Shown: in pieces, positions 1 to 64,000 of the stretch
Position numbering within the stretch: the first letter of the stretch is position 1
How the letters are laid out: the number at the start of each line of letters is the position of its first letter
Source of the DNA: Haplodiscus bocki
Taxonomy: Eukaryota
Assembly: GCA_965655095.1 (NCBI GenBank)
Contig: OZ296652.1
Span: 57,660,001-57,724,000 of the forward strand
Length of the DNA stretch: 64,000 nt
Reading direction: 5' to 3'
The notes under the pieces: generated by a model
The model's database searches: none
Told to the model about the DNA's origin: nothing
Seen by the model: only the letters and a program-made list of their open reading frames with translations
Translations under genes and position numbers: made by a program

Positions 1-3000
1 ACTTGGCTGAAATGAAAAGAACTATGACAGCAAACCAAAACTGATTTCTATTAGAATTGAGTTCTCTGAATGGTGCTAAGTAGGAATCTAGCCACCTGCA
101 GACGTAGATTCCCGAAAAAAACACTGCCAATGGAGTAAAGGCATTACGAACTGGGCTGGAACTCTGGTCAGTTGTATCGCTCAAAAATACTTCGGCAAGT
201 TTTTGAACGGAAAAAGCATAGTGTGTGAAAGACTGATTTTTTTTTGTTAAACATTTGGAAAATTGACCCATGTTCGGGCTTAGATGTTAGGTGTTTGAAG
301 ATATAAGTTCAAACAAGCTGAGTTTTCAAATTTCTTGTTCGCAAAAAATGATTAAAGAATTTCCACTCAACCAGGAGTCGGTTTCCTGAACACTGCTGTT
401 TCCCTGGTCTTTTCGAGCCCTAACTGTGCCAATTGCAGACCTAGGTTCAGGACTTAAAAATCAATATTGACGAAACAATTCCAGGTAAACCAAGAAAGAC
501 CGCAACTCCAACTTTTTCCATTAAACATCATCTGGATGTCTTTTCACCGCGAATCTGTCTTTTTTGCCAACATATTGGAGTGTTACTGCCACGTCGATGT
601 AATGTTTCAATCACTTGAAAAAAAGGCTGCCAGGAGATTAATTACGATATAAAGAAGCGCCGTTCTCGAACGCAGTAAGAATCTGAATTCTCAAGCTCGT
701 TTCGCAAACGAAAGGCAAACCTTTTCACCGCAAGGGAATGTAATCCCTGATAGAATTAGCACTTTTCGATTCGCCTCTTCCAAAAAGAGACATTCGCAGA
801 CCTAGTTCCGAGGAGATGAACTGCAATTAACGAAGTATCTTCCAAACATCTCTACCGTCCACTATACTCAGCACAATTGTCATCGAAGTTTTTATGGCAG
901 CAACTAAACATTTTTATCCGGAAAAATAGCTTTTACTGCGATGCTTGTGCAAACTTGGGAGTTAGTCGCATACCAAGCTTCCAGGAGATAGGACTGCAAA
1001 TTAGCTAAAGATCATCATCAAAGCTTGAAAGAATGTGAGGTTTTAAGCTGTCTGCCAAAACAAGCCCTTAGTTAGTCCGCCCTCGACATTAAAGACTCCT
1101 ATGATGGAACAAGGTTTTACTAATACGCCTATGTAAATGTTTAGTCACTTGGAGCCCCAAACTCCTGGTAATACGAGCATATTTTACCGTAACGGCTTCA
1201 TCATAGCCAGGAAAGCTAAATTTCGAAGGTTTTTCTGCGTAACAACACAACGAAAACTGTAAAATGCAAGTGAAACTACTTCTCGGAAACAATGAGATCT
1301 CTTTGGTACGATTACTCAAAATTGAAGTCACTTGCAGAACTAGCGTCTGATAGACAACGTAATGGTTGGCTAAATCTCCGAACGAGCTATATACTCCACC
1401 CAACTTGGCTGAAATTAAAAGAACTATGACAGCAAACCAAAACTGATTTCTATTAGAATTGAGTTCTCTGAATGGTGCTAAGTAGGAATCTAGCCACCTG
1501 CAGACGTTGATTCCAGAAAAAAAGACTGTCAAAGGTCTAAAGGCATTACGAATTGGGCTGAAACTCTGGTCAGTTGTATCGCTCAAAAATACTTCGGCAA
1601 GTTTTTGAACGGAAAAAGCATAGTGTGTGAAAGACTGATTTATTTTGTTAAACCTTTGGAAAATTGACCCATGTTCGGGCTTAGGTGTTAGGTGTTTGAC
1701 GATAAAAATTCCAACAAGCTGAGTTTTCAAGTTTCTTTTTTGCAAAAAATGATCAAAACAATTCAACTCAACCAGAAGTTGGTTTGCTGAACACTGCTGT
1801 TCCCGTGTTCTTTTCGAGCCCTAACTGTGTCAATTGCAGACCTAGGTTCAGGATTTAAAAATCAATATTGACGAAACAATTCCAGGGAATCCAAGAAAGG
1901 CTGCAACTCCAACTTTTTCCATCAAACATCCTCTGGATGTGTTTTCACCGCAAATCTGTCTTTTTCGCCTACAATTGGAGTGTTATTGCTACGCCGATTT
2001 AATGTTTCAATCATTTGAAAAAAAGGGAGCCAGGAGATTAATTACGATATAAAGAATTGCCGTTCTAGAACGCAGTAAGAATCTGAATTCTCAAGCTCGT
2101 TTCGCAAACCAAATACAAGCCTTTTGACCGCAAAGAGAAAAAATCCCTGATACAATTGACACTTCTCCATTCGCTTTCTCCATAGAAGAGATATTTGCAG
2201 ACCTAGTTTCGAGGAGATAAACTGCAAATTAACGGAGTATCTTCCAAACATCTCTGCCTTCCACTGTACTCAGCACAATTGTCACCGAAGTTTTTATGGC
2301 CGCAACTGAACTTTTTATCCGGAGGAATAGCTTTTACTGCGATGCTTGGGCAAACTTGGGAGTCAGTCGCATACCATGATTCCTGGAGATAGGGCTGCAA
2401 ATTAGCTAAATATCATCATCAAAGCTTGAAAGAATGTGAGGTTTTGAGCTTTCTGCCAAAACCAGCCCTTAGTTAGTCCGCCCGCAACATCAAAGTTTTC
2501 TATGATGGAACGAAGTATTACTAATACGCCTATGTAAAATTTGTCACTTGGAGCCCCAAACTCCTGGTAATACGAGCATATTTTATCGTAACGGCTTCAT
2601 CAAAGCCAGGAAAGCTGAATTTCGAAGGTTTTTCTGCGTAACAACACAACGAAAATTGTAAAATGCAAGTGAAATTATTTCTCGGAAAAAATGAGGTCTC
2701 TTTGGTACGATTACTCAAAATTGAAGTCACCTGCAGAACTAGCGTCTGAGAGACAACGTAAAGGTTGGCTAAATCTCTGAACGAGTTATATACTCCACCC
2801 AGCTTGGCTGAAATGAAAAGAACTGTGACAGCAAACCAAAACTGATTTCTATTTGAAATGAGTTCTCTGAATGGTGCTAAGTAGGAATCTAGCCACCTGC
2901 AGACGTAGATTCCAGAATAAAAGACTGTCAACTGAATAAAGTCATTACGAACTGGGCTGAAATTTTGGACAGTTGTATCGCTCAAAAAGACTTCGGCAAT

Positions 3001-6000
3001 TTTTTGAACGGAAAAAGCATAGTGTGTGAAAGACTGACTTATTTTGTTAAACCTTCGGAAAATTGACCCATGTTCGGGTTAAGATGTTAGGTATTTGACG
3101 ACAAAAAATCAAACAAGCTGAGTTTTCAAGTTTCTTGTTTGCAAAAAATGATTAAAAAACTCAACTCATTCAGAAGTCGGTTTGCTTAACACTGCTGTTT
3201 CCCTGTTCTTTTCGAGCCCTAACTGTGTCAATTGAAGACCTAGGTTCAGGATTGAAAAATCAATTTTGAGGAAACAATTCCAGGACAACCAAGAAAGGCT
3301 GCAACTCCAACTTTTTCTATCAAACATCCTCTGGATGTGTTTTCAACGCGAATCTGTCTTTTTCGCCTACATATTGGAGTGTTATTGCTACGCCGATGTA
3401 ATGTTTCAATCATTTGAAAAAAGGCTGCCAGGAGATTAATTACGACAAAGAAATTCCGTTCTCGAAAGCAGTCAGAAACCTAATTCTCAAGCTCGTTTCG
3501 CAAACCAAATACAAACCTTTTGACCTTAAAGTAATATAATCCCTGATACCATTGACAATTCTCCTTTCGCTTACTCCATAGAAGAGATATTTGCAGACCT
3601 AGTTTCGAGGAGATAAACTGCAAAATAACGGAGTATCTTCCAAACATCTCTGCCTTCCACTATACTCAGCACAATTGTCATCGAAGTTTTTATGGCCGCA
3701 ACTAAACTTTTTATCCGGAAAAATAGCTTTTATTGCGATGCTTGTGCAAACTTGCGAGTCAGTCGCATACCATGATTCCAGGCGATAGGACTGGAAATTA
3801 GCTAAAAATCAACATCAAAGCTTGAATGAATGTGAGGTTTTAGACTGTCTGCCAAACTAAACCCTTAGTTAGTCCGCCCGCAACATTAAACATTTCTATG
3901 ATGGAAGGAGTTAAAACTAATACACCTATGTAAATGTTTAGTCACTTGGAGCCCCAAACTCCTGGTAATACGAGCATAATTTACCGTAACGGCTTCATCA
4001 AAGCCAGGAAAGCCGAATTTCGAAGGTTTTTCTGCGTAACAACACAACGAAAATTATAAAATGCAAGTGAAATTATTTCTCGAGAACAATGAGGTCTCTT
4101 TGGTACGATTACTCAAAATTGAAGTAACCTGCAGAACTAGCGTCTGAGAGACAACGTAATGGTTGGCTACATCTCCTCCGAACGAGCTATATACTCCACC
4201 CAACTTGGCTGAAATGAAAAGAACTATGAGAGCAAACCAAAACTGATTTCTAACAAAATTGAGTCCTATGAACGGGGCTCAATAGGAATCTAGCCACCTG
4301 CAGACGTAGATTCCAGAAAAACAAGACTGTCAACGGACTAAAGGCATTACGATCTGGGCTGAAATTCTGGACAGTTGTATCGCTCAAAAAGACTTCGGGA
4401 AGTTTTTGAACGGAAAAAGAATAGTGTGTGAAATACTGATTTATTTTGTTAAACCTTTGGAAAATTGACCCATGTTCGTGCTTAGGTGTTAGGTGTTTGA
4501 CGATATAAAGTCAAACAAGCTGAGTTTTCAAGTTTCCTGTTTGCAAAAAATGATTAAAGAAATTCAGCTCAACCAGGAGTTGGTTTGCTGAACACTGCTG
4601 TTTCCCTCTTCTTTTCGAGCCCTAACTGTGTCAATTGCAGACCTAGGTTCAGGATTGAAAAATCAATTTTGACGAAACAATTCCAGGACAACCAAGAAAG
4701 GCTGCAACTCCAACTTTTTCCATCAAACATCCTCTGGATGTGTTTTCAACGCGAATCTGTCTTTTTCGCCTACAAATTGGAGTGTTATTGCTACGCCGAT
4801 GTAATGTTTCAATCATTTGAAAAAAAGGCTACCAGGAGATTAATTACGACAAAGAAATTCCGTTCTCGAAAGCAGTCAGAAACCTAATTCTCAAGCTCGT
4901 TTCGCAAACCAAATACAAACCTTTTGACCGCAAAGTAATATAATCCCTGATACCATTGACAATTCTCCTTTCGCTTACTCCATAGAAGAGATATTTGCAG
5001 ACCTAGTTTCGAGGAGATAAACTGCAAATTAACGGAGTATCTTCCAAACATCTCTGCCTTCCACTATACTTAGCACAATTGTCATCGAAGTCTTTATGGC
5101 CGCAACTAAACTTTTTATCCGGAAAAATAGCTTTTACTGCGATTGTTGTGCAAACTTGTGAGTCAGTCGCATACCAAGCTTCCAGGCGATAGGACTGGAA
5201 ATTAGCTAAAAATCAACATCAAAGCTTGAAAGAATGTCAGGTTTTAAGCTTTCTGCCAAAAAAAGCCCTTAGTTAGTCCGCCCGCAACATTAAATGTTTC
5301 TATGATGGAACAAAGTAATACCAACACGCCTATGTAAATTTTTAGTCACTTGGAGCCCGAAACTCCTAGTAATACGAGCTTATTTTACCGTAACAGCTTC
5401 ATCAAAGCCAGGAAATCTGAATTTCGAAGGTTTTTCTGCGTAACAACACAACGAAAATTGTAAAATGCGAGTGAAATTAATTCTCGGAAACAATGAGGTC
5501 TCTTTGGTACGATTACACAAAATCGGATTCACCTGCAGAACTAGCGTCTGGGAGACAACGTAATGGTTGGCTACATCTCCTCCGAACGAGCTATATACTC
5601 CACCCAACTTGGCTGAAATGAAAAGAACTATGACAGCAAACCAAAACAGATTTCTAACAAATTTGAGTTTTATGAACGGGGCTCAGTAGGAATCTAGCCA
5701 CCTGCAGACGTAGATTCCAGAAAAAGAGACTGTCAACTGAATAAAGTCATTACGAACTGGGCTGAAATTTTGGACAGTTGTATCGCTCAAAAAGACTTCG
5801 GGAAGTCTTTGAACGGAAAAGGCATAGTGTGTGAAATACTGATTTATTTTATTAAACCTATGGAAAATTGACTCATGTTCGGGCTAAGGTTTTAGGTGTT
5901 TGACGATAAAAATTCAAACAACTTGAGTTTTCAAGTTTCTTTTTTGCAAAAAATGATCAAAACAATTCAACTCAACCAGAAGTCGACTTGCTGGACACTG

Positions 6001-6050
6001 CTGTTTCCTTGTTCTTTTCGAGCCCCAACTGTGTCAATTGCAGACCTAGG
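1..6050. repeat. Subfamily A domain: ~4.3 units, period 1399-1403 bp
   Basis: Anchor spacings are 1401, 1399, 1402 and 1403. Diagnostic strings such as gccaggagattaattacga, cccttagttagtccgccc and tatactccacccaacttggctg are absent from B-type units. Confidence 0.93.
435..1835. repeat. Example HOR unit (A type) made of 8 diverged ~175-bp monomers M1-M8
   Basis: The degenerate motif starts at 435 (gcagacctaggttcagga), 617 (gaaaaaaaggctgccaggagat), 796 (gcagacctagttccgaggagat), 968 (gcataccaagcttccaggagat), 1151 (ggagccccaaactcctggtaat), 1334 (gcagaactagcgtctga), 1500 (gcagacgttgattccagaa) and 1663 (attgacccatgttcggg, weakest). The next M1 is at 1836. Spacings are 163-183 bp. Confidence 0.85.
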
Positions 6051-9000
6051 TTCAGGATATAAGAGTCAATATTGACGAAACAAATGCAAAACCAAGAAAT
6101 GCTGCAACTTTTTCCGTCAAACATCCTATCGAACTGCTTCCACAGGGACTCAAAAATTTTTAGAGAGATTGGAGTGTCATTGCTTCGCTATGTGAAGTTT
6201 GTGCCAAATGCAGAAAGATTTCCATGAGATCAAGTACGAGTTAACGAAGTTTCTTGCTTAGTATCAAAAAACGCTGAATTTTAGGCTTTTTTTCGCAAAA
6301 AGGCTCATCAAAACCTCTGGCCGCATGGAAAAACTTTCTGAAGAATGGAGGTTCATCCTTATGTCTTATACAATGTAGGATCATTCACAGAGATAGCTGC
6401 CAGTTGATAGAAGACAAACTGACGACAATTGATCGTAACAACTTCTTCGTTGGAGCACTTTGAGGAACGATCGCTTCGCAAATTTTATGCCCGGAAATAA
6501 ACGATTTTATCCGCAAAAAAATAGCTTTCCCTGCGATGGTTGTGCAAACTTGGGAGTCCTTTGCATACCTAGCGTCCAGGATAAAAGACTGGAAAATACG
6601 ACACTCATCATCAAAGCCTGAAGAATCTAAGATTTGAGCCGTCTACGGAAATCGGTCCTTGGTTTGTTTGCCCGCAACAATAAAGGTTCTTCTGTTGAAA
6701 GGCCTTACCAGTACGCACATGTGAAATTTTAGTCGCTTGGAGACCAATTTCACAGGAAAAAAATCAGAATTTTCCGTAATGTCTGCATTGAAGCCAGAAA
6801 ATGCTGAGTTTTCGAAAGTATTCTGCAAAACGACTCTCAGAATGTTGTTAACAACAACTGGAACTGTTTCTCTCAAACAACGATCTCTATAGTATACCCA
6901 CTCAAAACTGAAGTCACTGGCTGAACTAGCGTCTAAGAGACAAAGTATAAATTGGCAAAATCTCCCCGAACGAATTCTATTTTCCAGGCTACATGGCTAA
7001 AATCGAAAAAACTATCAACGCAACTGGAAACCACATTCTGAAAAACTGGAATTCTTTCACCCTGGCTAAGCAAGAAGTTAGCCAATTTCCGAGGTAGTTC
7101 TCAGAAAAGTACGATTGTCACCGTAATAAACACACTACGATGTAGGCTGAAAAACTGAACTTTCATCGGTCAAAAAGAATTCCACAACCCTTTGAACGGA
7201 AAAAAACATAGTGTGTGACACTCTGATTCATCTTGTTAAACTCCTGGAAAAACTGATCCATATTCGAAGTTAGGGGTTGAGTGTATGAGTACATAAATTC
7301 AAACAAGCTGAGTTTTCAGGTTCCTCTCTCGCAAAAATTGATCAAAAAAAATCTAACTGAACCAAAAGTTAATTTACTGGAAACTTCTGTTTCCCTGTTC
7401 TTTTCGAGCCGTAAGTGTCAATTGCAGACATAGGTTCAGGATATAAAACGATACAAGTGCCAAACCAAGATATGCTGCAACTCCAACTTTTTCCGTCAAA
7501 CATCCTATCGAATTGCTTCCACAGCGACTCAAATACTTTTAGAGACAGATTGGAGTTTCATTGCTTCGCTATGTGAAGTTTGTGCCAATTGCAGAAAGAC
7601 TTCCACGAGATCAAGTACGGTTTAACGAAGTTTCTTGCTTAGTACCGAAAAAAACGCTGAATCTGAAGCTTTTTTTCGCAAAAAGACTCATCAAAACCTC
7701 TGGCCGCATGGAAAAACTTTCTGAAGAATGGAGGTTCATCTTTATGTCTTATACAATGTAGGATCATTCACAGAGATAGCTGCCAGTTGATAGAAGACAA
7801 ACTGACGACAATTGATCGTAACAACTTCTTCGTTGGAGCACTTTCAGGAACACTAGCTTCGCAAATTTTATGCCCGCAACTTGACAATTGTATCCACAAA
7901 AAATGGTTTTTCCAGCAATGCCTGTGCAAACTTGGGAGTCGTTTGCATACCTAGCGTCCAGGATAAAAGACTGAAAACACGACGATCGTCATAAACGCCT
8001 GAAAAATCTAAGATTTGAGCCTTCAGCGGAAATCGGTCCTTGGTTTGTTTGTCCGCAACAATAAAAGTTCTTCTGATGAAAGGCCTTACCAGTACGCCCA
8101 TGTGAATTTTTTGTCACTTGGAGACCCATTTCTCAGGAAAAAAATCAGAATTTTCCGAAACGTCTGCATTGAAGCCAGAAATCGCTGAGTTTTCGAAAGT
8201 ATTCACAAAACAACTCAGAATATTGTTAGCATCAACTCGAACTGTTCCTCTGAAACAACGACCTCTTTAGTATGCCTAGCGGCAGAACTAGGCACCTGCA
8301 GAACTAGCGTCTGAAAGCACTGTAAAAGTCGGCGAAGTCTCCATTCGACGAAATCTATCTTCCAAGCTACTTGGCTAAAATTAAAAGAACTAAGACAGAA
8401 AATCAAAAATATTCAATGTCTGGAAGATTTGGGTTTTTGACCATAGCTGAACAACAATCTAGCCAATTGCAGACATACTTTCCAGAAAAAAAGCAATTTC
8501 ATCCGACTATACACCTTGCGAAGTAGGTGGAAAAGTCTGAAAATTTTATCGCTCCAAAAGACCACCAGAACTTTTTCAACCGTAAAAATTATAGTTTTTG
8601 ACATACTGATTGAGTTTAAATTTTCGGGAAAATTTTCTATATTCGAATTTAGACATTAAGCGTATGACACCATAAATTCAAACAAGCTGAGTTTTCAGGC
8701 TCGTTCTTCGCAAAAGTTGTTTAATGAAACTGAAGGCAACGAAAAGACAGTTTGTTGAACACTACTGCTTCCCTGTTCTATCCGAGCATAACCTCTGTCA
8801 ATTCCAAACCTAGGTTCAGGATATAAAAGTCAAAATTGACGAAACAATTCCAGAAACGCCAAGATTTGCTGCATTTCAACTTTTCCCCTCAGACATCCTT
8901 TGGATATGTTTTAATCGCAAATCTGTCTTTTTTGCCAAGATATTGGAGTCTAATTTCTACGCCGATGTAATGTTTCAATGGCTTGAAAAATAGTTTGCCA

Positions 9001-12000
9001 GGAGATTAATTACCACATAGAGAATAGCGTTCTCGAACGCAGTAAGTATCTGAATTTTCAAGCTCGTTTCGCAAACCAAATCAATCCTTTTCACCGCAAA
9101 GAAATGTAATCCCTTATAGAATTGGCATTTCTCGATTCGCCTTTTCCAAAAAAAGAGATACTCGCAGACCTAGTTTTGAGGAGATAAACGGCAAATTAAC
9201 GAAGCATCTTCCAAACATCTCTGCCTTTAGTATACTCAGCACAACTGTCATCGAAGTTTTTATGGCCGCAATTAAATATTTTTATCCGGAAAAATAGCTT
9301 GTACTGCGATGCTTGTGCAAACTTGGGAGTCAGTCGCATACCAAGCTTCCAGGAGATAGGACTAGAATTTAGCTAAACATCATCATCAAAGCTTGGAAGA
9401 ATGTGAAGTTTTAGGCTTTCTGCCAAAATAAGCCCTTAGTTAGTCCGCCCGCAACATTAGCGACTTCTATGATGGAACGAGGTATTACTAATACGCCTAT
9501 GTAAATTTCTAGTCACTTAGAGCCCCAAACTCCTGGTAATACGAGCATATGTTACCAAAACGGCTTCATCAGAGCCAGGAAAGCTAAATTTCGAAGGTTT
9601 TTCTGCGTAACAACACAACGAAAATTGTAAATTGCAAGTGAAACTATTTCTCGGAAACAATGAGGTCTCTTTGGTAGGATTACTCAAAAACGAAGTCACC
9701 TGCAGAACTAGTGTCCGAAAGACAACGTAATGGTTGGCTAAATCTCCGAACGAGCTATATACTCCACCCAACTTGGCTGCAATGAAAAGAACTATGACAG
9801 CAAACCAAAACTGATTTCTAATAGAATTGAGTTCTCTGAACGGGGCTAAGTAGGAATCTTGCCACCTGCAGACGTAGATTCCAGAAAAAAAGACTCAACA
9901 GACTAGAGGCATTACCAACTGGGCTGAATTCTGGACATCGAAGCAACTCATAGAATATTGTTAACATCAGCAGGAACTGTTTCTCTGAAACCACGATTTC
10001 TTTAGTAAGCCTACTGAAAACTGGAGTCACTGGCTGAACTAGCGTCTAAGATACAAAGTATAAATTGGCGAAATCTCTCCCGAACGAATTCTCTTTTCCA
10101 GGCTCCATGGCTAAAATCGAAAGGTTTATGACCTCAACTCAAAACCACATTCTGACAATCTGGAATTCTTTCACCCTGGCTAAACAAGAATTTAGCCAAT
10201 TTCAGGGGTAGTTCTCAGAAAAGTACGATTGTCACCGTAATAAACACACTACGATGTAGGCTGAACAACTGAACTTTTTTAGCTCAAAAGGAATTCCACA
10301 ACTCTTTGAACGTCGAAAAATCATAGTGTGTGACACTCTGATTTATCTTGTTAAAATTCTGGAAAAACTGATCCATATTCGATGTTAGACGTTGAGTGTA
10401 TGAGTAAATAAGTTCAAACAAGCTGAGTTTTCAGGTTCCTCTCTCGCAAAAGTTGATCAATAAAATTGAACTGAACGAAAAGTTATTTTACTGGAAATTT
10501 CTGTTTCCCTGTTTCTTTCGCGCCTTAACTGTGTCAATTGCAGACCTACATTCAGGAGATAAAAGTCTATATTGACGAAACAATTGGAAAGCCAAGAAAT
10601 CCTGCAACTCCAACTTTCTCCGTCAAACATCCTATCGAACTGCTTCCACAGCGACCCAATTATTTTTTGAGACAGATTGGAGTGTCATTGCTTCGATATG
10701 TGACGTTTTGGCCAATTGCAGAAAGACTTCCACGAGATCAAGTACGATTTAACGAAGTTTCTTGCTTGGTATCAAAAAAACGCTGAATCTTAAGATTTTT
10801 TTTCGCGAAAAAGACTCATCACAACCTCTGGCCGCATGGTAAAACTTTCCCAAGAATGGAGCTTAATCTCTATGTCTTATCCAATGTAGGATCATTCACA
10901 GAGATAGCTGCCAGTTGATAGAAGACAAACTGACGAAAATTGATCGTAACAACTTCTTCGTTGGAGCACTTTGAGGAACACTAGCTTCGCAAATTTTATG
11001 CCCGCAACTTGACAATTCTATCCGCAAAACATATTTCCAGCGATGCCTGTGGAAACTTGGGAGTCCTTTGCATATCTAGCCTCCAGGATAAAAGACTGGA
11101 AAATAGGACACTCATCATCAAAGCCTGAAAAATCTAAGATTTGAGCCGTCTACGGAAATCGGTCCATGGTTTGTTTGCCCGCAACAATAAAGGTTCTTCT
11201 GTTGAAAGGCCTTAGCAGTACGCACATACGAAATTTTAGACGCTCGGAGACCAGTTTCACAGGGAAAAAGTCAGAATTTTCCGAAACGTCTGCATTGAAG
11301 CCAGAAATTGCTGAGTTTTCGAAAGTATTCACAAAACAACTCAGAATATTGTTAGCATCAACTCGAACTGTTCCTCTGAAACAACGACCTCTTTAGTATG
11401 CCTAGCGGCAGAACTAGGCACCTGCAGAACTAGCGTCTGAAAGCACTGTAAAAGTCGGCGAAGTCTCCATTCGACGAAATCTTTCTTCCAAGCTACTTGG
11501 CTAAAATTAAAAGAACTAAGACAGAAAATCAAAAATATTCAATGTCTGGAAGATTTGGGTTTTTGACCATAGCTGAACAACAATCTAGCCAATTGCAGAC
11601 ATACTTTCCAGTAAAAAAGCAATTTCATCCGACTATACACCTTGCGAAGTAGGTGGAAAAGTCTGAAAATTTTATCGCTCCAAAAGACCACCAGAACTTT
11701 TTCAACCGTAAAAATTATAGTTTTTGACATACTGATTGAGTTTAAATTTTCGGGAAAATTTTCTATATTCGAATTTAGACGTTAAGCGTATGACACCATA
11801 AATTCAAACAAGCTGAGTTTTCAGGCTCGTTCTTCGCAAAAGTTGTTCAATGAAACTGAAGGCAGCGAAAAGACAGTTTGTTGAACACTACTGCTTCCCT
11901 GTTCTATCCGAGCATAACCTTTGTCAATTCCAAACCTAGGTTCAGGATATAAAAGTCAAAATTGACGAAACAATTCCAGAAACGCCGAGATTTGCTGCAT

Positions 12001-21000: not shown

Positions 21001-21380
21001 AGCTGCCACTTGATAGAAGACAAACTGACGATAATTGATCGTAACAACTTCTTCGTTGGAGCACTTTCAGGAACACTAGCTTCGCAAATTTTATGCCCGC
21101 AACTTGACAATTCTATCCACAAAAAATGGTTTTTCCAGCGATGCCTGTTCAAACTTGGGAGTCCTTTGCATACCTAGCGTCCAGGATAAAAGACTGGACA
21201 ATACGACGATCATCATCGAAGCCTGAAAAAACTAAGATTTGAGCCTTCAGCGGAAATCGGTCTTTGGTTTGTTTGCCCGCAACAATAGGGGTCCTTCTGA
21301 TGAAAGGCCTTACCAGTACGCACATGTGAAAGTTTAGTCGCTTGGAGACCAATTTCACAGGGAAAAAAATCAGAATTTTC
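6051..21380. repeat. Left flank: heterogeneous, mosaic B-type units (mostly 1379-1399 bp) with embedded A-like and divergent D segments
   Basis: B-diagnostic strings are gatcaagtacg(a/g)tttaacgaag and acttcttcgttggagcac. Most units keep gttagacgttgagtgtatgag and aaaagtcaatattgacg. Neighbouring units differ visibly. Confidence 0.88.
8150..14095. repeat. Tandem duplication with a 3126-bp period (one 1736-bp unit plus one 1390-bp unit); shared block ~8150-10970 and ~11275-14095
   Basis: ORF pairs are offset by exactly 3126: 8215/11341, 8413/11539, 9771/12897 and 9818/12944. Both copies share the private junction ctggacatcgaagcaactc and the allele cagacctacattcaggagat. Confidence 0.93.
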
Positions 21381-52500: not shown

Positions 52501-55500
52501 AAAACTTTCCCAAGAATGGAGCTTCATCTTTATGTCTTATCCAATGTAGCATCATTCGCAGAGATAGCTGCCAGTTGATAGAAGACAAGCGGACGAAACT
52601 TGATCGTAACAAGTTCTTAGCTGGAGCACTTTGAGGAACACTCGCTTGGTAAATTTTATGCCCGCAACTAAACGAGTTTATCCGCAAAAAAAGGTTTTCC
52701 TGCAATGGTTGTGCAAACCTGGTAGTCACATGCATACCTAGCGTCCAGGATAAAAGACTGGAAAATACGACGATCCTCATCAAAGCCTGAAAAATCTAAG
52801 ATTTGAGCCTTCAGCGGAAATCGGTCCATGGTTTGTTTGCCCAAAACAATAAATGTTCTTCTGATGAAAAGCCTTACCAGTACGCCCATGTGAACGCTTT
52901 GTCACTTGGAGACCCATTTCCCCGAAAAATAAACAGAATTTTCCCAAATGTCAGCATTAAAGCCAGAAATTGCTGAGTTTTCAAAAGTATTCTGCAAAAC
53001 AACTCATAGAATATTGTTAATATCAACTGGAACCGTTTCTCTGAAACAATGATCTCTTTAGTACGCCTACTCAAAACTGAAGTCACCGGCAGAACTAGCG
53101 TCTAAGAGACAAAGTATACATTGGCAAAACCTCTCCCGAACGAATTCTGTTTTCCAGGCTACATGGCTAAAATCGAAAGAACTATGACAGCAACGGCAAA
53201 CCACATTCTGACAAACTGGAATACTTTCAGCCTGACTAAGCAAAAATTTGGACAGTTTTAGTGGTAGTTCTCAGAAAAGTAGGATTGTCACCGTATTAAA
53301 CACATTTTGAGGTTGGCTGGAAAACTGAAAATTTTGATAGGTCAAAAAGAAATCCACAACTCTGTGAACGGAAAAAAACATAGTGTGTGACACTCTGATT
53401 TATCTTGTTAAACTCCTGGAAAAACTGATCCATATTCGAAGTTAGGCGTTGAGTGTATGAGTACATAAATTCAAACAAGCTGAGTTTTCAGGTTCCTCTC
53501 TCGCAAATGTTGACCAATGAAATTGAACTGAACCAAAAGTTATTTTACTGGAAACTTCTGTTCCTCTGTTCTTCTCGAGCCCTAACTGTGTCAATTGCAG
53601 ACCTAGTTCCAGGATATAAAAGTCAATATTGACAAAACAATTGCAAAGCCAAGAAATGCTGCAACTCCAACTTTTTCCGTCAAACATCCTATCGAACTGC
53701 TTCCACAGCGACTCAAATAGTTTTAGAGACAGATTGGAGTGTCATTCCTTCGCTATGTGAAGTTTTTGCCACTTGCAGAAATGACTTCCAGTTATCACGT
53801 ACGATTTAACGAAGTTTCTTCCTTAGTATCAAAAAAATGCCGGATCTAAAGCTTTTTTCACAAAAAGACTCATCAAAACCTCTGGCCGCATGGAAAAAAT
53901 TCTGAAGAATGGGGTTTCATCATTATGTCTTATCTAAAGTAGGATGATTAACAGAGCTAGCTGCCAGTTGATAAAAAACAAACTGACGAGGTTTGATCGT
54001 AACAACTTTTACCTTGGAGCACTTTCAGGAAAACTCACCTCGCACTTTTCATGCCCGCAACTAAACATTATATTGCCAAAAAAAGTTATTATTGGGCAAT
54101 GCTTGTTCAAACTTGGAGTCATTCGCATACCTATCTTCCAGCAGATGAGACTGGAAACTACCTGAAGATCCTCATCAAACCCTGAAACAATATAAGCTTT
54201 AAGTCGTCAGCGTAAATTGGTCCTTGGTTTGTTTGCGAGCAAGATTAAGGTTCTTCTGATGAAAGGCCTTACCAGTACGCCCATGTGAAACTTTAGTTAC
54301 TTGGAGACCCATTTCCCAGGAAAAAATCAGAATTTTCCGTAATGTCAGCGTTAAAGGCAGAAATTGCTGAGTTTTCAAAAGTATTCTGCAAAACAACTCG
54401 TAGAATCTTGTTAACATCAACTGGAACTGTTTCCCTGAAACAATGATCTCTTGAGTACGCCTACTCAAAACTGAAGTCACTGGCAGAACTAGCGTCTAAG
54501 AGACAAAAAAGAAATTGGCGAAGTCTCTCCCTAACGAATTCTATTTTCCAGGCTACATGGCTAAAATCGAAAGAACTACGACAGCAACGGAAAACCACAT
54601 TCTGAAAAACTGGAGTTCTTTCACCATGGCTAAGCAAGAATTTGGCCAATTTTAGAGGTTGTTCTCAGAAAAGTAGTATTGTCACCGTATTAAACACATT
54701 ACGAAGTAGGCTGAAAAACTGAAGTTTTAAAGCTCAAAAAAACTCCATAACTCTTTGAACGGCAAAAAAATCATAGTGTGTGACACTCTGTTTCATCTTG
54801 TTAAACTTCTGGAAAAACTGATCCATATTCGAAGTTAGACGTTGAGTGTATGAGTACATAAATTCAAACAAGCTGAGTTTTCAGGTTCCTCTCTCGCAAA
54901 AGTTGATCAATGAAATTGAACTGAACCAAAAGTTATTTTACTGGAAACTTCTGTTCCTCTGTTCTTCTCGAGCCCTAACTGTGTCAATTGCAGACCTAGT
55001 TCCAGGATATAAAAGTCAATATTGACAAAACAATTGCAAAGCCAAGAAATGCTGCAACTCCAACTTTTTCCGTCAAACATCCTTTGGAACTGCTTCCACA
55101 GCCACTCAAATATTTTTAGAGACAGATTGGAGTGTCATTGCTTCGCTAGGTGAAGTTTTTGTCACTTGCAGAAAAGACTTCCAGTAATCGCGAACGATTT
55201 AACGAAGTCTCTTCATTAGTATCAAATAAATGCCGAATCTGAAACTTTTTTTCCCAAAAAGACTCATTAAACCCTCTGGCCGCATGGAAAAACTTTCCGA
55301 AGAAGGGAGCTTCATCTTTGTGTCTTATCCAATGTAGGATCAATCACAGAGATAGCTGCCAGTTGATAGAAGACAAACTGACGAAATTTGATCGTAACAA
55401 CTTCTTCGTTGGAGCACTTTCAAGAACACTAGCTTCGCAAATTTTATGCCCGCAACTTGACAAATTTATCCGCAAAAAATTGTTTTTCCAGCGATGCTTG

Positions 55501-55860
55501 TGCAAAATTTGGGAGTCGTTTGCATACCTAGCGTCCAGGATAAAAGTCTGGAAAATACGACGATCATCATTGAAGCCTGAAAAATCTAAGATTTGAGCCT
55601 TCAGCGGAAATCGGTCCTTGGTTTGTTTGTCCGCAACAATAAAAGTTCTTCTGACGAAAGGTCTTACCAGTACGCCAATGTGGAACTTTAGTTACTTGGA
55701 GACCCATTACCCCGGAAAAAAAACAGAATTTTCCGAAATGTCAGCATTAAAGCCAGAAATTGCTGAGTTTTCAAAATTATTCTGCAAAACAACTCCTAGA
55801 AAAATGTTAACATGAACTGGAACTATTTCTCTGAAACAATGATCTATTTAGTACGCCTAC
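49541..55860. repeat. Right flank: heterogeneous B-type units, period 1382-1396 bp
   Basis: Flank alleles return (gttagacgttgagtgtatgag, aactgtgtcaa, gatcaagtacg). Anchor spacings are 1384, 1386, 1382, 1393 and 1396. Confidence 0.85.
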
Positions 55861-58800
55861 TCAAGACTGAAGTCACCGGCAGAACTAGCGTCTAAGAGAC
55901 AAAGTATACATTGGCAAAACCTCTCCCGAACGAATTCTGTTTTCCAGGCTACATGGCTAAAATCGAAAGAACTATGACAGCAACGGTAAACCACATTCTG
56001 ACAAAATGGAGTTCTTTCACCATGGCTAAGCAAAAATTTGGCCAATTTTGGAGGTAATTCTCAGAAAACTAGGATTGTCACCGTTTTAAACACATTAAGA
56101 AGTAGGCTGAAAAACTAAAAACTTTCCTAGCCCAAAAAGAGTTCCACAACTCTTTGAACGGCAAAAAAACAGTGTGTGACACTCTGTTTCATCTTGTTAA
56201 ACTTCTGGAAAAACTGATCCCTATTCGAAGTTAGACGTTGAGTGTATGAGTACATAAATTCAAACAAGCTGAGTTTTCAGGTTCCTCTCACGCAGAAGTT
56301 GATCAATATAATTGAACTGAACGAAAAGCTATTTTACTGGAAACTTCAGTTTCCCTGTTCCAGCCGTAACTGTGTCAATTGCAGACCTAGTTTCAGGATA
56401 TAAAAGTCACTATTGACAAAACAATTGCAAAGCCAAGAAATGCTGCAACTCCAACTTTTTCCGTCAAACATCCTATCGAACTGCTTCCACAGCGACTCAA
56501 ATATTTTTAGAGACAGATTGGAGTGTCAATGCTTCGCTCTGTGAAGTTTTTGCCACTTGCAGAAATGAGTTCCAATTATCACGTACTATTTAACGAAGTT
56601 TCTTCCTTAGTATCAAAAAAATGCCGAATCTAAAGCTTTTTTCACAAAAAGACTCATCAAAACCTCTGGCCGCACGGAAAAACTTTCTGAGGAATGGAGC
56701 TTCATCATTCTCTCATCGATTGTAGGATCATTCACAGAGCTAGCTTCCAGTTGATAAAAAACAAACTGAAGATGTTTGATCGTAACAACTTTCACATTGG
56801 AGCACTTCCAGGAACTCACCTCGCACTTTTTATGCCCGCAACCAAACATTATATTGCCAAAAAAAAAGAATTTTGGGCAATGCTTGTTCAATCTCGGAGT
56901 CATTCGCATACCTAGCTTCCAGCAGATGAGACTGGAAACTACCTGAAGACCCTCATCAAACCCTGAAACAATATAAGGTTTAAGTCTTCAGCGTAAATTG
57001 GTCCCCGGTTTGTTTGCGAGCAAGATTAAAGGTTCTTCTGATGCATGGCCTTACCGGTACGCCCATGTGAAACTTTAGTTACTTGGAGACCGATTGCCCC
57101 GAAAAATAAACAGAATTTTCCCAAATGTCAGCATTAAAGCCAGAAATTGCTGAGTTTTCAAAAGTATTCTGCAAAACAACTCATAGAATATTGTTAATAT
57201 CAACTGGAACTGTTTCTCTGAAACAATGATCTCTTTAGTACGCCTACTCAAAACTGAAGTCACCGGCAGAACTAGCGTCTAAGAGACAAAGTATACATTG
57301 GAAAAACCTCTCCCGAACGAATTCTGTTTTCCAGGCTACATGGCTAAAATCGAAAGAACTATGACAGCAACGGTAAACCACATTCTGACAAAATGGAGTT
57401 CTTTCACCATGGCTAAGCAAAAATTTGGCCAATTTTGGAGGTAATTCTCAGAAAACTAGGATTGTCACCGTTTTAAACACATTAAGAAGTAGGCTGAAAA
57501 ACTAAAAACTTTCCTAGCCCAAAAAGAGTTCCACAACTCTTTGAACGGCAAAAAAACAGTGTGTGACACTCTGTTTCATCTTGTTAAACTTCTGGAAAAA
57601 CTGATCCCTATTCGAAGTTAGACGTTGAGTGTATGAGTACATAAATTCAAACAAGCTGAGTTTTCAGGTTCCTCTCACGCAGAAGTTGATCAATATAATT
57701 GAACTGAACGAAAAGCTATTTTACTGGAAACTTCAATTTCCCTGTTCCAGCCGTAACTGTGTCAATTGCAGAACTAGTTTCAGGATATAAAAAGTCACTA
57801 TTGACAAAACAATTGCAAAGCCAAGAAATGCTGCAACTCCAACTTTTTCCGTCAAACATCCTATCGAACTGCTTCCACAGCGACTCAAATATTTTTAGAG
57901 ACAGATTGGAGTGTCAATGCTTCGCTATGTGAAGTTTTTGCCACTTGCAGAAATGAGTTCCAATTATCACGTACTATTTAACGAAGTTTCTTCCTTAGTA
58001 TCAAAAAAATGCCGAATCTAAAGCTTTTTTCACAAAAAGACTCATCAAAACCTCTGGCCGCATGGAAAAACTTTCTGAAGAATGGAGCTTCATCATTGTC
58101 TCATCGATTGTAGGATTATTCACAGAGCTAGCTTCCAGTTGATAAAAAACAAACTGAAGATGTTTGATCGTAACAACTTTCACATTGGAGCACTTCCAGG
58201 AACTCACCTCGCACTTTTTATGCCCGCAACCAAACATTATATTGCCAAAAAAAAGAATTTTGGGCAACGCTTGTTCAATCTCGGAGTCATTCGCATACCT
58301 AGCTTCCAGCAGATGAGACTGGAAACTACCTGAAGACCCTCATCAAACCCTGAAACAATATAAGGTTTAAGTCTTCAGCGTAAATTGGTCCCCGGTTTGT
58401 TTGCGAGCAAGATTAAAGGTTCTTCTGATGCATGGCCTTACCGGTACGCCCATGTGAAACTTTAGTTACTTGGAGACCGATTGCCCCGAAAAATAAACAG
58501 AATTTTCCCAAATGTCAGCATTAAAGCCAGAAATTGCTGAGTTTTCAAAAGTATTCTGCAAAACAACTCATAGAATATTGTTAATATCAACTGGAACTGT
58601 TTCTCTGAAACAATGATCTCTTTAGTACGCCTACTCAAAACTGAAGTCACCGGCAGAACTAGCGTTTAAGAGACAAAGTATACATTGGCAAAACCTCTCC
58701 CGAACGAATTCTGTTTTCCAGGCTACATGGCTAAAATCGAAAGAACTATGACAGCAACGGCAAACCACATTCTGACAAAATGGAGTTCTTTCACCATGGC

Positions 58801-61800
58801 TAAGCAAAAATTTGGCCAATTTTGGAGGTAATTCTCAGAGAACTAGGATTGTCACCGTTTTAAACACATTAAGAAGTAGGCTGAAAAACTAAAAACTTTC
58901 CTAGCCCAAAAAGAGTTCCACAACTCTTTGAACGGCAAAAAAACAGTGTGTGACACTCTGTTTCATCTTGTTAAACTTCTGGAAAAACTGATCCCTATTC
59001 GAAGTTAGACGTTGAGTGTATGAGTACATAAATTCAAACAAGCTGAGTTTTCAGGTTCCTCTCACGCAGAAGTTGATCAATATAATTGAACTGAACGAAA
59101 AGCTATTTTACTGGAAACTTCAATTTCCCTGTTCCAGCCGTAACTGTGTCAATTGCAGAACTAGTTTCAGGATATAAAAAGTCACTATTGACAAAACAAT
59201 TGCAAAGCCAAGAAATGCTGCAACTCCAACTTTTTCCGTCAAACATCCTATCGAACTGCTTCCACAGCGACTCAAATATTTTTAGAGACAGATTGGAGTG
59301 TCAATGCTTCGCTATGTGAAGTTTTTGCCACTTGCAGAAATGAGTTCCAATTATCACGTACTATTTAACGAAGTTTCTTCCTTAGTATCAAAAAAATGCC
59401 GAATCTAAAGCTTTTTTCACAAAAAGACTCATCAAAACCTCTGGCCGCATGGAAAAACTTTCTGAGGAATGGAGCTTCATCATTGTCTCATCGATTGTAG
59501 GATCATTCACAGAGCTAGCTTCCAGTTGATAAAAAACAAACTGAAGATGTTTGATCGTAACAACTTTCACATTGGAGCACTTCCAGGAACTCACCTCGCA
59601 CTTTTTATGCCCGCAACCAAACATTATATTGCCAAAAAAAAGAATTTTGGGCAATGCTTGTTCAATCTCGGAGTCATTCGCATACCTAGCTTCCAGCAGA
59701 TGAGACTGGAAACTACCTGAAGACCCTCATCAAACCCTGAAACAATATAAGGTTTAAGTCTTCAGCGTAAATTGGTCCCCGGTTTGTTTGCGAGCAAGAT
59801 TAAAGGTTCTTCTGATGCATGGCCTTACCGGTACGCCCATGTGAAACTTTAGTTACTTGGAGACCGATTGCCCCGAAAAATAAACAGAATTTTCCCAAAT
59901 GTCAGCATTAAAGCCAGAAATTGCTGAGTTTTCAAAAGTATTCTGCAAAACAACTCATAGAATATTGTTAATATCAACTGGAACAGTTTCTCTGAAACAA
60001 TGATCTCTTTAGTACGCCTACTCAAAACTGAAGTCACCGGCAGAACTAGCGTTTAAGAGACAAAGTATACATTGGCAAAACCTCTCCCGAACGAATTCTG
60101 TTTTCCAGGCTACATGGCTAAAATCGAAAGAACTATGACAGCAACGGCAAACCACATTCTGACAAAATGGAGTTCTTTCACCATGGCTAAGCAAAAATTT
60201 GGCCAATTTTGGAGGTAATTCTCAGAAAACTAGGATTGTCACCGTTTTAAACACATTAAGAAGTAGGCTGAAAAACTAAAAACTTTCCTAGCCCAAAAAG
60301 AGTTCCACAACTCTTTGAACGGCAAAAAAACAGTGTGTGACACTCTGTTTCATCTTGTTAAACTTCTGGAAAAACTGATCCCTATTCGAAGTTAGACGTT
60401 GAGTGTATGAGTACATAAATTCAAACAAGCTGAGTTTTCAGGTTCCTCTCACGCAGAAGTTGATCAATATAATTGAACTGAACGAAAAGCTATTTTACTG
60501 GAAACTTCAATTTCCCTGTTCCAGCCGTAACTGTGTCAATTGCAGAACTAGTTTCAGGATATAAAAAGTCACTATTGACAAAACAATTGCAAAGCCAAGA
60601 AATGCTGCAACTCCAACTTTTTCCGTCAAACATCCTATCGAACTGCTTCCACAGCGACTCAAATATTTTTAGAGACAGATTGGAGTGTCAATGCTTCGCT
60701 ATGTGAAGTTTTTGCCACTTGCAGAAATGAGTTCCAATTATCACGTACTATTTAACGAAGTTTCTTCCTTAGTATCAAAAAAATGCCGAATCTAAAGCTT
60801 TTTTCACAAAAAGACTCATCAAAACCTCTGGCCGCATGGAAAAACTTTCTGAGGAATGGAGCTTCATCATTGTCTCATCGATTGTAGGATCATTCACAGA
60901 GCTAGCTTCCAGTTGATAAAAAACAAACTGAAGATGTTTGATCGTAACAACTTTCACATTGGAGCACTTCCAGGAACTCACCTCGCACTTTTTATGCCCG
61001 CAACCAAACATTATATTGCCAAAAAAAAAGAATTTTGGGCAATGCTTGTTCAATCTCGGAGTCATTCGCATACCTAGCTTCCAGCAGATGAGACTGGAAA
61101 CTACCTGAAGACCCTCATCAAACCCTGAAACAATATAAGGTTTAAGTCTTCAGCGTAAATTGGTCCCTGGTTTGTTTGCGAGCAAGATTAAAGGTTCTTC
61201 TGATGCATGGCCTTACCGGTACGCCCATGTGAAACTTTAGTTACTTGGAGACCGATTGCCCCGAAAAATAAACAGAATTTTCCCAAATGTCAGCATTAAA
61301 GCCAGAAATTGCTGAGTTTTCAAAAGTATTCTGCAAAACAACTCGTAGAATATTGTTAATATCAACTGGAACCGTTTCTCTGAAACAATGATCTCTTCAG
61401 TACGCCTACTCAAAACTGAAGTCACCGGCAGAACTAGCGTTTAAGAGACAAAAAATAAATTGGCGAAGTCTCTCCCTAACGAAATATTTTCCAGGCTACA
61501 TGGCTAAAATCGAAAGAACTATGACAGCAACGGAAAACCACATTCTGACAAACTGGAGTTCTTTCACCATGGCTAAGCAAGAATTTGGCCAATTTTAGAG
61601 GTAGTTCTCAGAAAACTAGGATTGTCACCGTTTTAAACACATTAAGAAGTAGGCTGAAAAACTAAAAACTTTCATAGCTCAAAAAGAGTTCCACAACTCT
61701 TTGAACGGCAAAAAAACACAGTGTGTGACACTCTGTTTCATCTTGTTAAACTTCTGGAAAAACTGATCCCTATTCGAAGTTAGACGTTGAGTGTATGAGT

Positions 61801-64000
61801 ACATAAATTCAAACAAGCTGAGTTTTCAGGTTCCTCTCACGCAGAAGTTGATCAATATAATTGAACTGAACGAAAAGCTATTTTACTGGAAACTTCAGTT
61901 TCCCTGTTCCAGCCGTAACTGTGTCAATTGCAGAACTAGTTTCAGGATATAAAAGTCACTATTGACAAAACAATTGCAAAGCCAAGAAATGCTGCAACTC
62001 CACCTTTTTCCGTCAAACATCCTATCGAACTGCTTCCACAGCGACTCAAATATTTTTAGAGACAGATTGGAGTGTCAATGCTTCGCTATGTGAAGTTTTT
62101 GCCACTTGCAGAAATGAGTTCCAATTATCACGTACTATTTAACGAAGTTTCTTCCTTAGTATCAAAAAAATGCCGAATCTAAAGCTTTTTTCACAAAAAG
62201 ACTCATCAAAACCTCTGGCCGCATGGAAAAACTTTCTGAAGAATGGAGCTTCATCATTGTCTCATCGATTGTAGGATCATTCACAGAGCTAGCTTCCAGT
62301 TGATAAAAAACAAACTGAAGATGTTTGATCGTAACAACTTTTACATTGGAGCACTTCCAGGAACTCACCTCGCACTTTTTATGCCCGCAACCAAACATTA
62401 TATTGCCAAAAAAAAAGAATTTTGGGCAATGCTTGTTCAATCTCGGAGTCATTCGCATACCTAGCTTCCAGCAGATGAGACTGGAAACTACCTGAAGACC
62501 CTCATCAAACCCTGAAACAATATAAGGTTTAAGTCTTCAGCGTAAATTGGTCCCCGGTTTGTTTGCGAGCAAGATTAAAGGTTCTTCTGATGCATGGCCT
62601 TACCGGTACGCCCATGTGAAACTTTAGTTACTTGGAGACCGATTGCCCCGAAAAATAAACAGAATTTTCCCAAATGTCAGCATTAAAGCCAGAAATTGCT
62701 GAGTTTTCAAAAGTATTCTGCAAAACAACTCATAGAATATTGTTAATATCAACTGGAACTGTTTCTCTGAAACAATGATCTCTTTAGTACGCCTACTCAA
62801 AACTGAAGTCACCGGCAGAACTAGCGTCTAAGAGACAAAGTATACATTGGCAAAACCTCTCCCGAACGAATTCTGTTTTCCAGGCTACATGGCTAAAATC
62901 GAAAGAACTATGACAGCAACGGTAAACCACATTCTGACAAAATGGAGTTCTTTCACCATGGCTAAGCAAAAATTTGGCCAATTTTGGAGGTAATTCTCAG
63001 AAAACTAGGATTGTCACCGTTTTAAACACATTAAGAAGTAGGCTGAAAAACTAAAAACTTTCCTAGCCCAAAAAGAGTTCCACAACTCTTTGAACGGCAA
63101 AAAAACAGTGTGTGACACTCTGTTTCATCTTGTTAAACTTCTGGAAAAACTGATCCCTATTCGAAGTTAGACGTTGAGTGTATGAGTACATAAATTCAAA
63201 CAAGCTGAGTTTTCAGGTTCCTCTCACGCAGAAGTTGATCAATATAATTGAACTGAACGAAAAGCTATTTTACTGGAAACTTCAGTTTCCCTGTTCCAGC
63301 CGTAACTGTGTCAATTGCAGACCTAGTTTCAGGATATAAAAGTCACTATTGACAAAACAATTGCAAAGCCAAGAAATGCTGCAACTCCAACTTTTTCCGT
63401 CAAACATCCTATCGAACTGCTTCCACAGCGACTCAAATATTTTTAGAGACAGATTGGAGTGTCAATGCTTCGCTATGTGAAGTTTTTGCCACTTGCAGAA
63501 ATGAGTTCCAATTATCACGTACTATTTAACGAAGTTTCTTCCTTAGTATCAAAAAAATGCCGAATCTAAAGCTTTTTTCACAAAAAGACTCATCAAAACC
63601 TCTGGCCGCATGGAAAAACTTTCTGAAGAATGGAGCTTCATCATTGTCTCATCGGTTGTAGGATCATTCACAGAGCTAGCTTCCAGTTGATAAAAAACAA
63701 ACTGAAGATGTTTGATCGTAACAACTTTTACATTGGAGCACTTCCAGGAACTCACCTCGCACTTTTTATGCCCGCAACCAAACATTATATTGCCAAAAAA
63801 AGAATTTTGGGCAATGCTTGTTCAATCTCGGAGTCATTCGCATACCTAGCTTCCAGCAGATGAGACTGGAAACTACCTGAAGACCCTCATCAAACCCTGA
63901 AACAATATAAGGTTTAAGTCTTCAGCGTAAATTGGTCCCTGGTTTGTTTGCGAGCAAGATTAAAGGTTCTTCTGATGCATGGCCTTACCGGTACGCCCAT
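55861..64000. repeat. Subfamily E: ~6 near-identical units, period 1387-1388 bp
   Basis: Anchors at 56262, 57649, 59036, 60423, 61811 and 63198. Diagnostic strings are gcagaaatgagttccaattatcacgtac, cagcagatgagactggaaactacctgaag and ctgttccagccgtaac. Confidence 0.93.

What the first reader, a model, noticed from the sequence alone, without database searches (positions are those of the whole stretch)
435..63200. The 1.4-kb repeat is a cryptic 8-mer higher-order repeat of an ancient ~173-bp monomer
Seen: within each unit a degenerate motif (consensus roughly aaacttnagtcacttgcagacctagnttccagganaaa) recurs eight times at 163-183 bp spacing, in both A (435, 617, 796, 968, 1151, 1334, 1500, 1663) and core units (24765, 24932, 25108, 25281, 25457, 25639, 25808, 25972). 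A second motif follows about 55-60 bp later in several monomers: gctgagttttcg..ctgcaaaacaactc (M5), gctgagttttcag..ctcgcaaaaattg (M8), gctgaatcttgag..ttcgcaaaaagactc (M2) and gctgaaaaactg..gctcaaaaaaactc (M7). Monomers are barely alignable to each other while whole units are nearly identical. Established: nucleosome-length monomers grouped in HORs define primate alpha satellite (171 bp), and ~178-bp monomers form Arabidopsis centromeric satellite. Inference: this is a very old HOR in which homogenisation moved from monomer to 8-mer level. I do not recognise the family, so it may be undescribed.
Basis: partly seen in the sequence, partly recalled or inferred. Interest (0 to 1): 0.88.

Follow-up and report, generated by a model that had tools for sequence, protein, structure and literature searches.

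The report
Old eight-monomer satellite repeat, confirmed
The whole window is non-coding satellite DNA whose 1.4-kb repeat unit is built from eight very old, strongly diverged copies of a ~172-bp piece. This layout resembles human centromere repeats, but nothing here shows that it forms a centromere.

Summary
The window is one head-to-tail array of 45 full units of 1,364-1,404 bp. Units are 96-99.6% alike in a young core (21598-49016) and fall to about 65% between subfamilies. Each unit holds eight homologous monomers of 159-185 bp.

- The best off-diagonal self-alignments of the unit consensus all lie at whole multiples of ~172-175 bp.
- Each monomer is recovered by a profile built from the other seven (0-2 of 200 shuffles do as well).
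- Monomers at different positions are 44% identical, against 28% for shuffles.
- In a tree of 40 monomers from five subfamilies they form eight position-specific clades. The 8-mer therefore predates the subfamily split.

A monomer profile tiles the window with 370 plus-strand hits and no gaps.

I found no tRNA, Rfam or Pfam match, no CENP-B box and no codon-position bias. The only protein hits are mis-called ORFs of this satellite on two contigs of one metagenome assembly. Evidence for constraint on the motif is weak.

The array runs about 15 kb beyond the window start, with units decaying towards the edge. A second, colinear A-type array lies on another contig.

Verdict: an ancient higher-order-repeat satellite, a new member of a known kind. 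Centromere function is untested. Other first-reader notes report similar hidden repeats elsewhere in this genome; I did not check them.

The parts
1..64000 (+). One continuous head-to-tail satellite array: 45 full units of 1,364-1,404 bp plus partial units, tiled by 370 monomers.
   Evidence: BLAST of one unit against the window. The monomer profile gives 370 plus-strand and 0 minus-strand hits, spaced 151-184 bp with no gaps.
1..5606 (+). Subfamily A: four units of ~1,402 bp, 90-93% alike and 67% identical to the core.
5607..6990 (+). Mosaic unit B at the A/C border. M1, M2 and M8 group with A; M3-M7 group with C.
   Evidence: monomer tree; identities
8369..14620 (+). Two copies of a 3,126-bp super-repeat. 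Each copy holds an A2 unit, then 167 bp of a further A-type unit, then a jump to C-unit position ~1201, then a C unit. The jump at 9937-9941 (and 13063-13067) is near in-phase, from M1 phase ~104 to M7 phase ~113.
   Evidence: (lag 3126). Short contigs from two samples bridge 8368/8369 and 9937-9941 with no differences.
13232..21597 (+). Older C-type units, 87-89% identical to the core reference unit.
21598..49016 (+). Young homogeneous core: 20 units of 1,364-1,376 bp. Neighbours are 96-99.6% alike, and identity falls smoothly with distance.
49017..55950 (+). Transition zone of older C units, plus one D-like unit (53161).
55951..64000 (+). Subfamily D: units of ~1,387 bp, 98-99.6% alike and 82-85% identical to the core. 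It runs off the window end.
34009..35372 (+). Representative core unit cut into eight monomers. M1 34009, M2 34177, M3 34336, M4 34503, M5 34681, M6 34852, M7 35023, M8 35207-35372. Each starts 20 nt before motif 1.
   Evidence: boundaries mapped from the consensus
34877..34896 (+). Best-kept copy of motif 1 in the core (M6): TGCATACCTAGCGTCCAGGA.
   Evidence: 56 matches at up to 3 mismatches, all on the plus strand; 0 expected
34703..35233 (-). 176-aa open frame over M5-M7, probably not a gene. The A-type counterpart is 1089-1766 (-), 225 aa.

Best explanation
This is a non-coding satellite whose 1.37-1.40-kb unit is an ancient higher-order repeat of eight ~172-bp monomers.

The likely history is as follows. 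A tandem array of ~172-bp monomers diverged. A block of eight adjacent monomers then became the unit that unequal crossing-over and gene conversion copy and homogenise. Since then the eight positions have drifted apart to about 44% identity, roughly one substitution per site. Whole units were kept alike locally.

Later rounds produced subfamilies A, A2, B, C, D and an edge type. The youngest expansion is the 27-kb core. Older, more diverged units lie on both sides, and units decay at the array edge.

What is shown: the homology of the eight monomers, the position-specific clades, the identity gradient, and the mosaic and jump units. What is inferred: the mechanism (unequal exchange and conversion in register with the 8-mer), the order of events, and any chromatin role.
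For: - Offsets of self-alignments fall at whole multiples of unit/8, with scores above all shuffles.
- Leave-one-out profile recovery works for all eight monomers in three subfamilies, and for most of them after motif 1 is removed.
- Monomers at different positions are 44% identical, against 28% for shuffles; same-position monomers are 74%.
- Eight position clades have support 93-100 across five subfamilies.
- The core is 96-99.6% identical and identity decays with distance in units. Units decline from 93% to 76% identity to the A consensus towards the left array edge, where two decayed monomers follow the last recognisable unit.
- Unit B is a mosaic of A and C, and the near in-phase M1-to-M7 jump is confirmed by independent contigs.
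- There is no tRNA, Rfam or Pfam match. Substitutions show no codon-position bias.
- The two halves of the monomer are not homologous, so ~172 bp is the basic period.
Against: - Plain autocorrelation and Fourier power at unit/8 are not significant on their own.
- M1 is not recovered once motif 1 is removed, and M2's motif 1 is weak.
- Two minus-strand open frames (181 and 206 codons) are longer than shuffles give and remain unexplained.
- A monomeric (non-HOR) array of the ancestral 172-bp repeat was not found. Only ~600 bp of flank could be read.
Confidence: 0.85

Rival explanations
1. The satellite is a fossil of a tandem-repeat protein gene on the minus strand (about 57 aa per repeat) that was amplified and is now decaying.
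For: Minus-strand stop-free stretches of 181 codons (core, M5-M7) and 206 codons (A, M7-M2) share a frame in M7/M8. They exceed dinucleotide shuffles (2/300 and 0/300). Two monomers are 171 bp, which is 57 codons. First-reader notes on other arrays of this genome suggest gene-born satellites.
Against: Substitutions are spread evenly over codon positions within and between subfamilies (p 0.44-0.96). There is no Pfam match. The Atlas feature score of 0.77 is at noise level. Searches of 5.8 billion proteins returned only ORFs called on this satellite itself, on two contigs of one assembly; those checked read through stops. Four other subfamilies have open frames within the null range, and coverage by open segments is not significant except in A. 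Monomer lengths of 159-185 bp mostly break the frame.
Confidence: 0.06
2. The 1.4-kb unit was born from a mobile element that already carried ~170-bp internal tandem repeats, as in MITE- or Helitron-linked satellites. On this view the eight parts come from the element and not from an old free-standing satellite.
For: Transposon-borne tandem repeats are a known source of satellites (review PMC5615363, section 3.1). Other arrays in this genome are reported as transposon-derived.
Against: The unit contains nothing except the eight homologous monomers, and the profile tiles it without gaps. I saw no transposon protein domain, inverted terminal structure or extra sequence. The array edge fades into decayed monomers and shows no element end.
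Confidence: 0.07
3. Only a short protein-binding or nucleosome-positioning motif recurs every ~172 bp, through selection or convergence, and the rest of each segment is unrelated.
For: Motif 1 is the best-kept block. WW dinucleotides show extra ~10-bp periodicity (p 0.016 and 0.002). Columns conserved among monomers vary slightly less among units (pi 0.063 vs 0.078, p 0.007).
Against: With motif 1 removed, M2, M3, M4 and M7 are still recovered in nearly every test, and M5, M6 and M8 in part. Conserved blocks are spread over the whole monomer. Tests of constraint on independent lineages are weak (p 0.02-0.32).
Confidence: 0.02

Closest known systems
Primate alpha satellite higher-order repeats
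   Same: Both have head-to-tail monomers of ~170 bp grouped in multimeric units that are homogenised as blocks. Both have position-specific monomer types and a young homogeneous core flanked by older, more diverged layers.
   Different: Alpha-satellite monomers within a unit are 70-90% identical (PMC5615363); here they are 33-55%. There is no CENP-B box. Sequence relatedness was not tested and is not expected. Centromere location is unknown. The units here also split into subfamilies only 65-85% alike within a single array.
Higher-order and complex satellites of beetles and non-primate mammals
   Same: These are HOR organisation outside primates, often with rearranged or truncated units (PMC5615363). 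The 10-monomer and fragment variants here are comparable.
   Different: Beetle HORs are usually dimers; this one is a regular 8-mer. Its monomers are also far more diverged than the 70-90% the review gives for alpha-satellite HORs.
Satellites whose unit keeps remnants of older sub-repeats (mouse, tilapia and sparid centromeric satellites)
   Same: In both, the present unit arose by duplication and divergence of a shorter repeat, now visible only as degenerate internal periodicity (PMC5615363).
   Different: Those sub-repeats are short (9 bp in the review's examples). Here the sub-repeat is of nucleosome length and there are eight in a 1.4-kb unit.

Membership tests
Higher-order-repeat (HOR) satellite | The unit is made of two or more adjacent homologous monomers in head-to-tail order. 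| tested here: met
   Eight monomers are recovered by leave-one-out profiles. 370 plus-strand hits tile the window.
Higher-order-repeat (HOR) satellite | Monomers at the same position in different units are much more alike than monomers at different positions in one unit. | tested here: met
   Identity is 74% (across subfamilies) and 96-99.6% (core units), against 44% for different positions. Eight position clades have support 93-100.
Higher-order-repeat (HOR) satellite | Homogenisation acts at the multimer period. | tested here: met
   The strongest autocorrelation lies at 1370-1387 bp and its multiples. Identity decays with distance in units.
Primate alpha satellite (sequence family) | Sequence homology to the alpha-satellite monomer. 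| not tested
   No alpha-satellite reference was available from a tool, and Dfam/Repbase are not on hand. I do not file this as a member.
Primate alpha satellite (sequence family) | CENP-B box (TTCGNNNNANNCGGG) in a subset of monomers. | tested here: not met
   0 matches on either strand.
Centromeric satellite | Association with the centromeric histone, or location at the primary constriction. | not testable with these tools
   No chromatin or cytogenetic data are available. The window's place on its chromosome is not given.
Centromeric satellite | Dyad symmetry or other non-B-DNA potential above background. | tested here: inconclusive
   DNA folding of the two halves of a core unit gives z +1.5 and -2.0 against 20 shuffles each.
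Gene-derived satellite (fossil coding repeat) | Detectable protein homology or a codon-position pattern in substitutions. | tested here: not met

The most novel reading that the evidence does not exclude
This array may be one member of a genome-wide superfamily of very old HORs built on one nucleosome-length (~167-177 bp) monomer. Other first-reader notes report 8-, 10- and 12-mer units on other pieces. That would be an invertebrate counterpart of the alpha-satellite suprachromosomal families, possibly marking centromeres, with motif 1 kept as a binding site for a sequence-specific protein.
Probability: 0.15. Interest if true: 0.65.

Novelty: new member of a known kind. Interest (0 to 1): 0.4.

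Why it matters
Higher-order repeats of nucleosome-length monomers are best documented in primates. Clear, regular multimers outside mammals are fewer, and those in beetles are mostly dimers.

This array shows how far such a structure can age. The monomers have drifted to about 44% identity while the 8-mer register has been kept through several rounds of subfamily formation. That makes it a useful test case for HOR-detection tools and for models of how the homogenisation period shifts.

If this animal's centromeres were mapped here, the array would also give a new system for studying layered centromere evolution. As it stands, it is a well-supported but ordinary kind of satellite.

Tried and rejected
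- **Tandem Repeats Finder:** it missed the array because its longest period is 500.
- **Rayleigh period scan:** the scan of alignment offsets was not significant because monomer lengths vary.
- **Half-period control:** the out-of-phase control was uninformative, because cheap end gaps let alignments slide back into phase.
- **A ~86-bp sub-repeat:** Fourier harmonic 16 has z 4.4 in the core. The two halves of the monomer show no homology, so the signal is compositional.
- **Coding origin:** Pfam, the Atlas, two large protein searches and codon-position counts were all negative.
- **RNA genes:** none found.
- **CENP-B box:** none.
- **Dyad symmetry:** inconsistent.
- **Constraint on conserved columns:** weak only. 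All tests point the same way, with p from 0.007 to 0.32. The first test was circular and I discard it.
- **Literature:** no paper on the family was found, including a search by motif string and by the assembly accession.
- **Right flank:** it could not be reached, because no genes are called in the D-type stretch read (window 55851-60256) and products read through stops cannot be looked up.
Full report
**Array structure**

The window has no N and is 39% G+C, with the plus strand A-rich. Match frequency against lag peaks at 1370-1387 bp and its multiples. BLAST of one unit against the window shows one uninterrupted head-to-tail array.

An alignment of the 45 full units gives five groups:

| Group | Window position | Identity |
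|---|---|---|
| A | 1-5606 | ~93% within the group |
| A2 | 8369 and 11495 | 81% to A |
| B | 5607 | single unit |
| C | 6991-55950 (except the A2 units and one D-like unit at 53161) | |
| D | 53161 and 55951 to the window end | 85% to C |

A and C are only 67% alike. Inside C, a young core (21598-49016, 20 units) has neighbours 96-99.6% alike, and identity falls smoothly from 0.978 at one unit apart to 0.968 at seven. Units on both sides of the core are older, at 82-92% to the core reference unit.

**The eight-monomer substructure**

I built consensus units for the core (1,372 bp) and for A (1,403 bp).

- **Autocorrelation.** Circular autocorrelation gives band maxima near 174, 346 and 524 bp, but none passes the multiple-test threshold.
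- **Self-alignment.** Alignment-based tests are decisive. In a sensitive self-BLAST, the eight best off-diagonal alignments of the core consensus lie at 3.06, 1.04, 2.01, 6.88, 0.97, 4.01, 2.10 and 2.90 times unit/8. The ten best of the A consensus lie at 0.99, 2.08, 3.06, 7.05, 1.92, 3.99, 2.86, 1.03, 1.03 and 6.00. If offsets were uniform, the summed deviations would have a probability of about 1.5e-5 and 2e-7 (my calculation). The best scores exceed all 200 dinucleotide shuffles.
- **Monomer lengths.** Cutting the unit 20 nt before each motif gives monomers of 176, 159, 167, 178, 171, 171, 184 and 166 bp in the core and 163-185 bp in A.
- **Leave-one-out test.** Profiles built from seven positions (using three subfamilies) recover the eighth in every case; 0-2 of 200 shuffles reach the observed score.
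- **Motif removed.** With the first 58 nt (motif 1) cut off, M2, M3, M4 and M7 are still recovered in nearly every test, M5, M6 and M8 in part, and M1 not. Homology therefore covers most of the monomer.
- **Conserved blocks.** The alignment shows several conserved blocks: GTCACTTGCAGACCTAG..TCCAGGAG, GCTGAR plus a T-run, CGCAAAAA, GCCCGCAAC and TTCTGA.
- **Identity.** Monomers at different positions are 44% identical (33-55%), against 28% for shuffles under the same procedure (z 7-10). Same-position monomers of different subfamilies are 74% identical.
- **Tiling.** A profile of all monomers tiles the window with 370 plus-strand hits and none on the minus strand, spaced 151-184 bp.
- **Basic period.** The two halves of the monomer are not homologous, so ~172 bp is the basic period. 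A compositional harmonic near 86 bp exists.

**Age and order of events**

A maximum-likelihood tree of 40 monomers (five subfamilies, eight positions) gives eight position-specific clades with support 93-100. The 8-mer therefore existed before the subfamilies split.

By Jukes-Cantor correction (my calculation), monomers at different positions differ by about 1.0 substitution per site, A and C by about 0.44, and core units by about 0.03.

**Signs of exchange**

- Unit B (5607-6990), at the A/C border, is a mosaic: M1, M2 and M8 group with A and M3-M7 with C. M2 of A2 groups with C/D.
- At 9937-9941 the sequence jumps from A-unit position ~170 (M1, phase ~104) to C-unit position ~1201 (M7, phase ~113). 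This adds two monomers. The block of A2 unit, two monomers and C unit (3,126 bp) occurs twice.
- Short contigs from runs of two samples bridge 8368/8369 and 9937-9941 without differences, so these joints are not assembly errors.

**What it is not**

- No tRNA.
- No Rfam family at gathering score over 30 kb, nor at E up to 1 over two units.
- No Pfam domain in the five longest ORFs.
- No CENP-B box.
- No consistent excess of dyad symmetry.

The minus strand carries stop-free stretches of 181 codons (core) and 206 codons (A), both longer than shuffles give. Against a coding origin:

- Substitutions are spread evenly over codon positions.
- The other subfamilies lie within the null range.
- The Atlas gives noise-level scores.
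- Two searches of 5.8 billion proteins return only ORFs called on this satellite itself, on two contigs of one assembly. Those checked read through TGA.

I treat the fossil-gene idea as unsupported. The two long frames remain unexplained.

**Constraint**

Columns conserved among the eight monomers vary slightly less among units. This holds when conservation and variation are measured on independent lineages, but the effect is small and mostly non-significant. WW dinucleotides show extra ~10-bp periodicity (p 0.016 and 0.002). That would suit wrapping on nucleosomes but does not prove it.

**Surroundings**

The window is identical to part of an ENA metagenome-assembly contig (ERZ26859043, ctg84688, 184,182 bp), with window position = 123318 minus contig position.

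The array continues to the left of the window start. The stretch read (L003, 14.5 kb beyond the start) is array throughout. By colinearity with the second contig, where the array edge is seen, I place the end about 15 kb out. A-type units there fall from 93% to 85%, 80% and ~76% identity to the A consensus, with a few rearranged fragments.

A second contig (ctg88551, 534,263 bp) carries a colinear A-type array of at least 35 kb, 94% identical over 16 kb. It is either the other haplotype or a duplicate locus. It ends with two decayed monomers (E 5e-9 and 8e-3) followed by about 300 bp of unlike sequence. Core-type ORFs were found only on the first contig. The right side of the array could not be reached.

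**Comparison and verdict**

The layout matches the definition of a higher-order repeat and resembles alpha satellite in monomer length, multimer homogenisation and layering (PMC5615363). It differs in three ways: the monomers are far more diverged (44% against 70-90%), there is no CENP-B box, and one array holds deeply split subfamilies.

No paper on this family was found. Repeat databases could not be searched and the organism is coded.

Other first-reader notes report similar hidden repeats of ~167-177-bp monomers on other pieces of this genome. I could not check them. If they share this monomer, the finding would grow into a superfamily.

I rate it a new member of a known kind, of moderate interest.

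Noticed in passing
window 5607-6990: Unit B is a recombinant between subfamilies. M1, M2 and M8 are A-like and M3-M7 are C-like, exactly at the A/C border. M2 of the A2 units is C/D-like.
   Followed up: partly
window 8369-14620: A two-copy 3,126-bp super-repeat (18 monomers) containing a near in-phase M1-to-M7 jump. The A2 parts are 97.7% alike but the C parts only 91.4%, so the two halves have different histories.
   Followed up: partly
window 34703-35233 (-) and 1089-1766 (-): Minus-strand open frames of 176-225 aa are longer than shuffles give. They show no coding signature and no homologues.
   Followed up: yes
L001-L005 (ENA ERZ26859043 contigs ctg84688 and ctg88551): This animal satellite sits in a public metagenome assembly. 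Of the ORFs called on it, those checked (P0001, P0002) read through stops, so protein databases carry spurious 'proteins' (P0001-P0010) made from satellite DNA.
   Followed up: partly
L004 1-20016 and L005 (ctg88551, 317311-352731): A second A-type array of at least 35 kb is colinear with the left flank of this one (94% over 16 kb, with the same rearranged fragments). No core-type ORFs were found on it. It is either the other haplotype with a large structural difference or a duplicated locus.
   Followed up: partly
whole unit, for example window 33944-35307: There is a compositional periodicity at half the monomer length (~86 bp; z 4.4 in the core) without sequence homology between the halves. 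WW dinucleotide periodicity near 10 bp is also enriched.
   Followed up: partly
window 16899-16938: A small 20-bp tandem duplication (1.9 copies) inside one older C unit. It is the only repeat that Tandem Repeats Finder reported.
   Followed up: no
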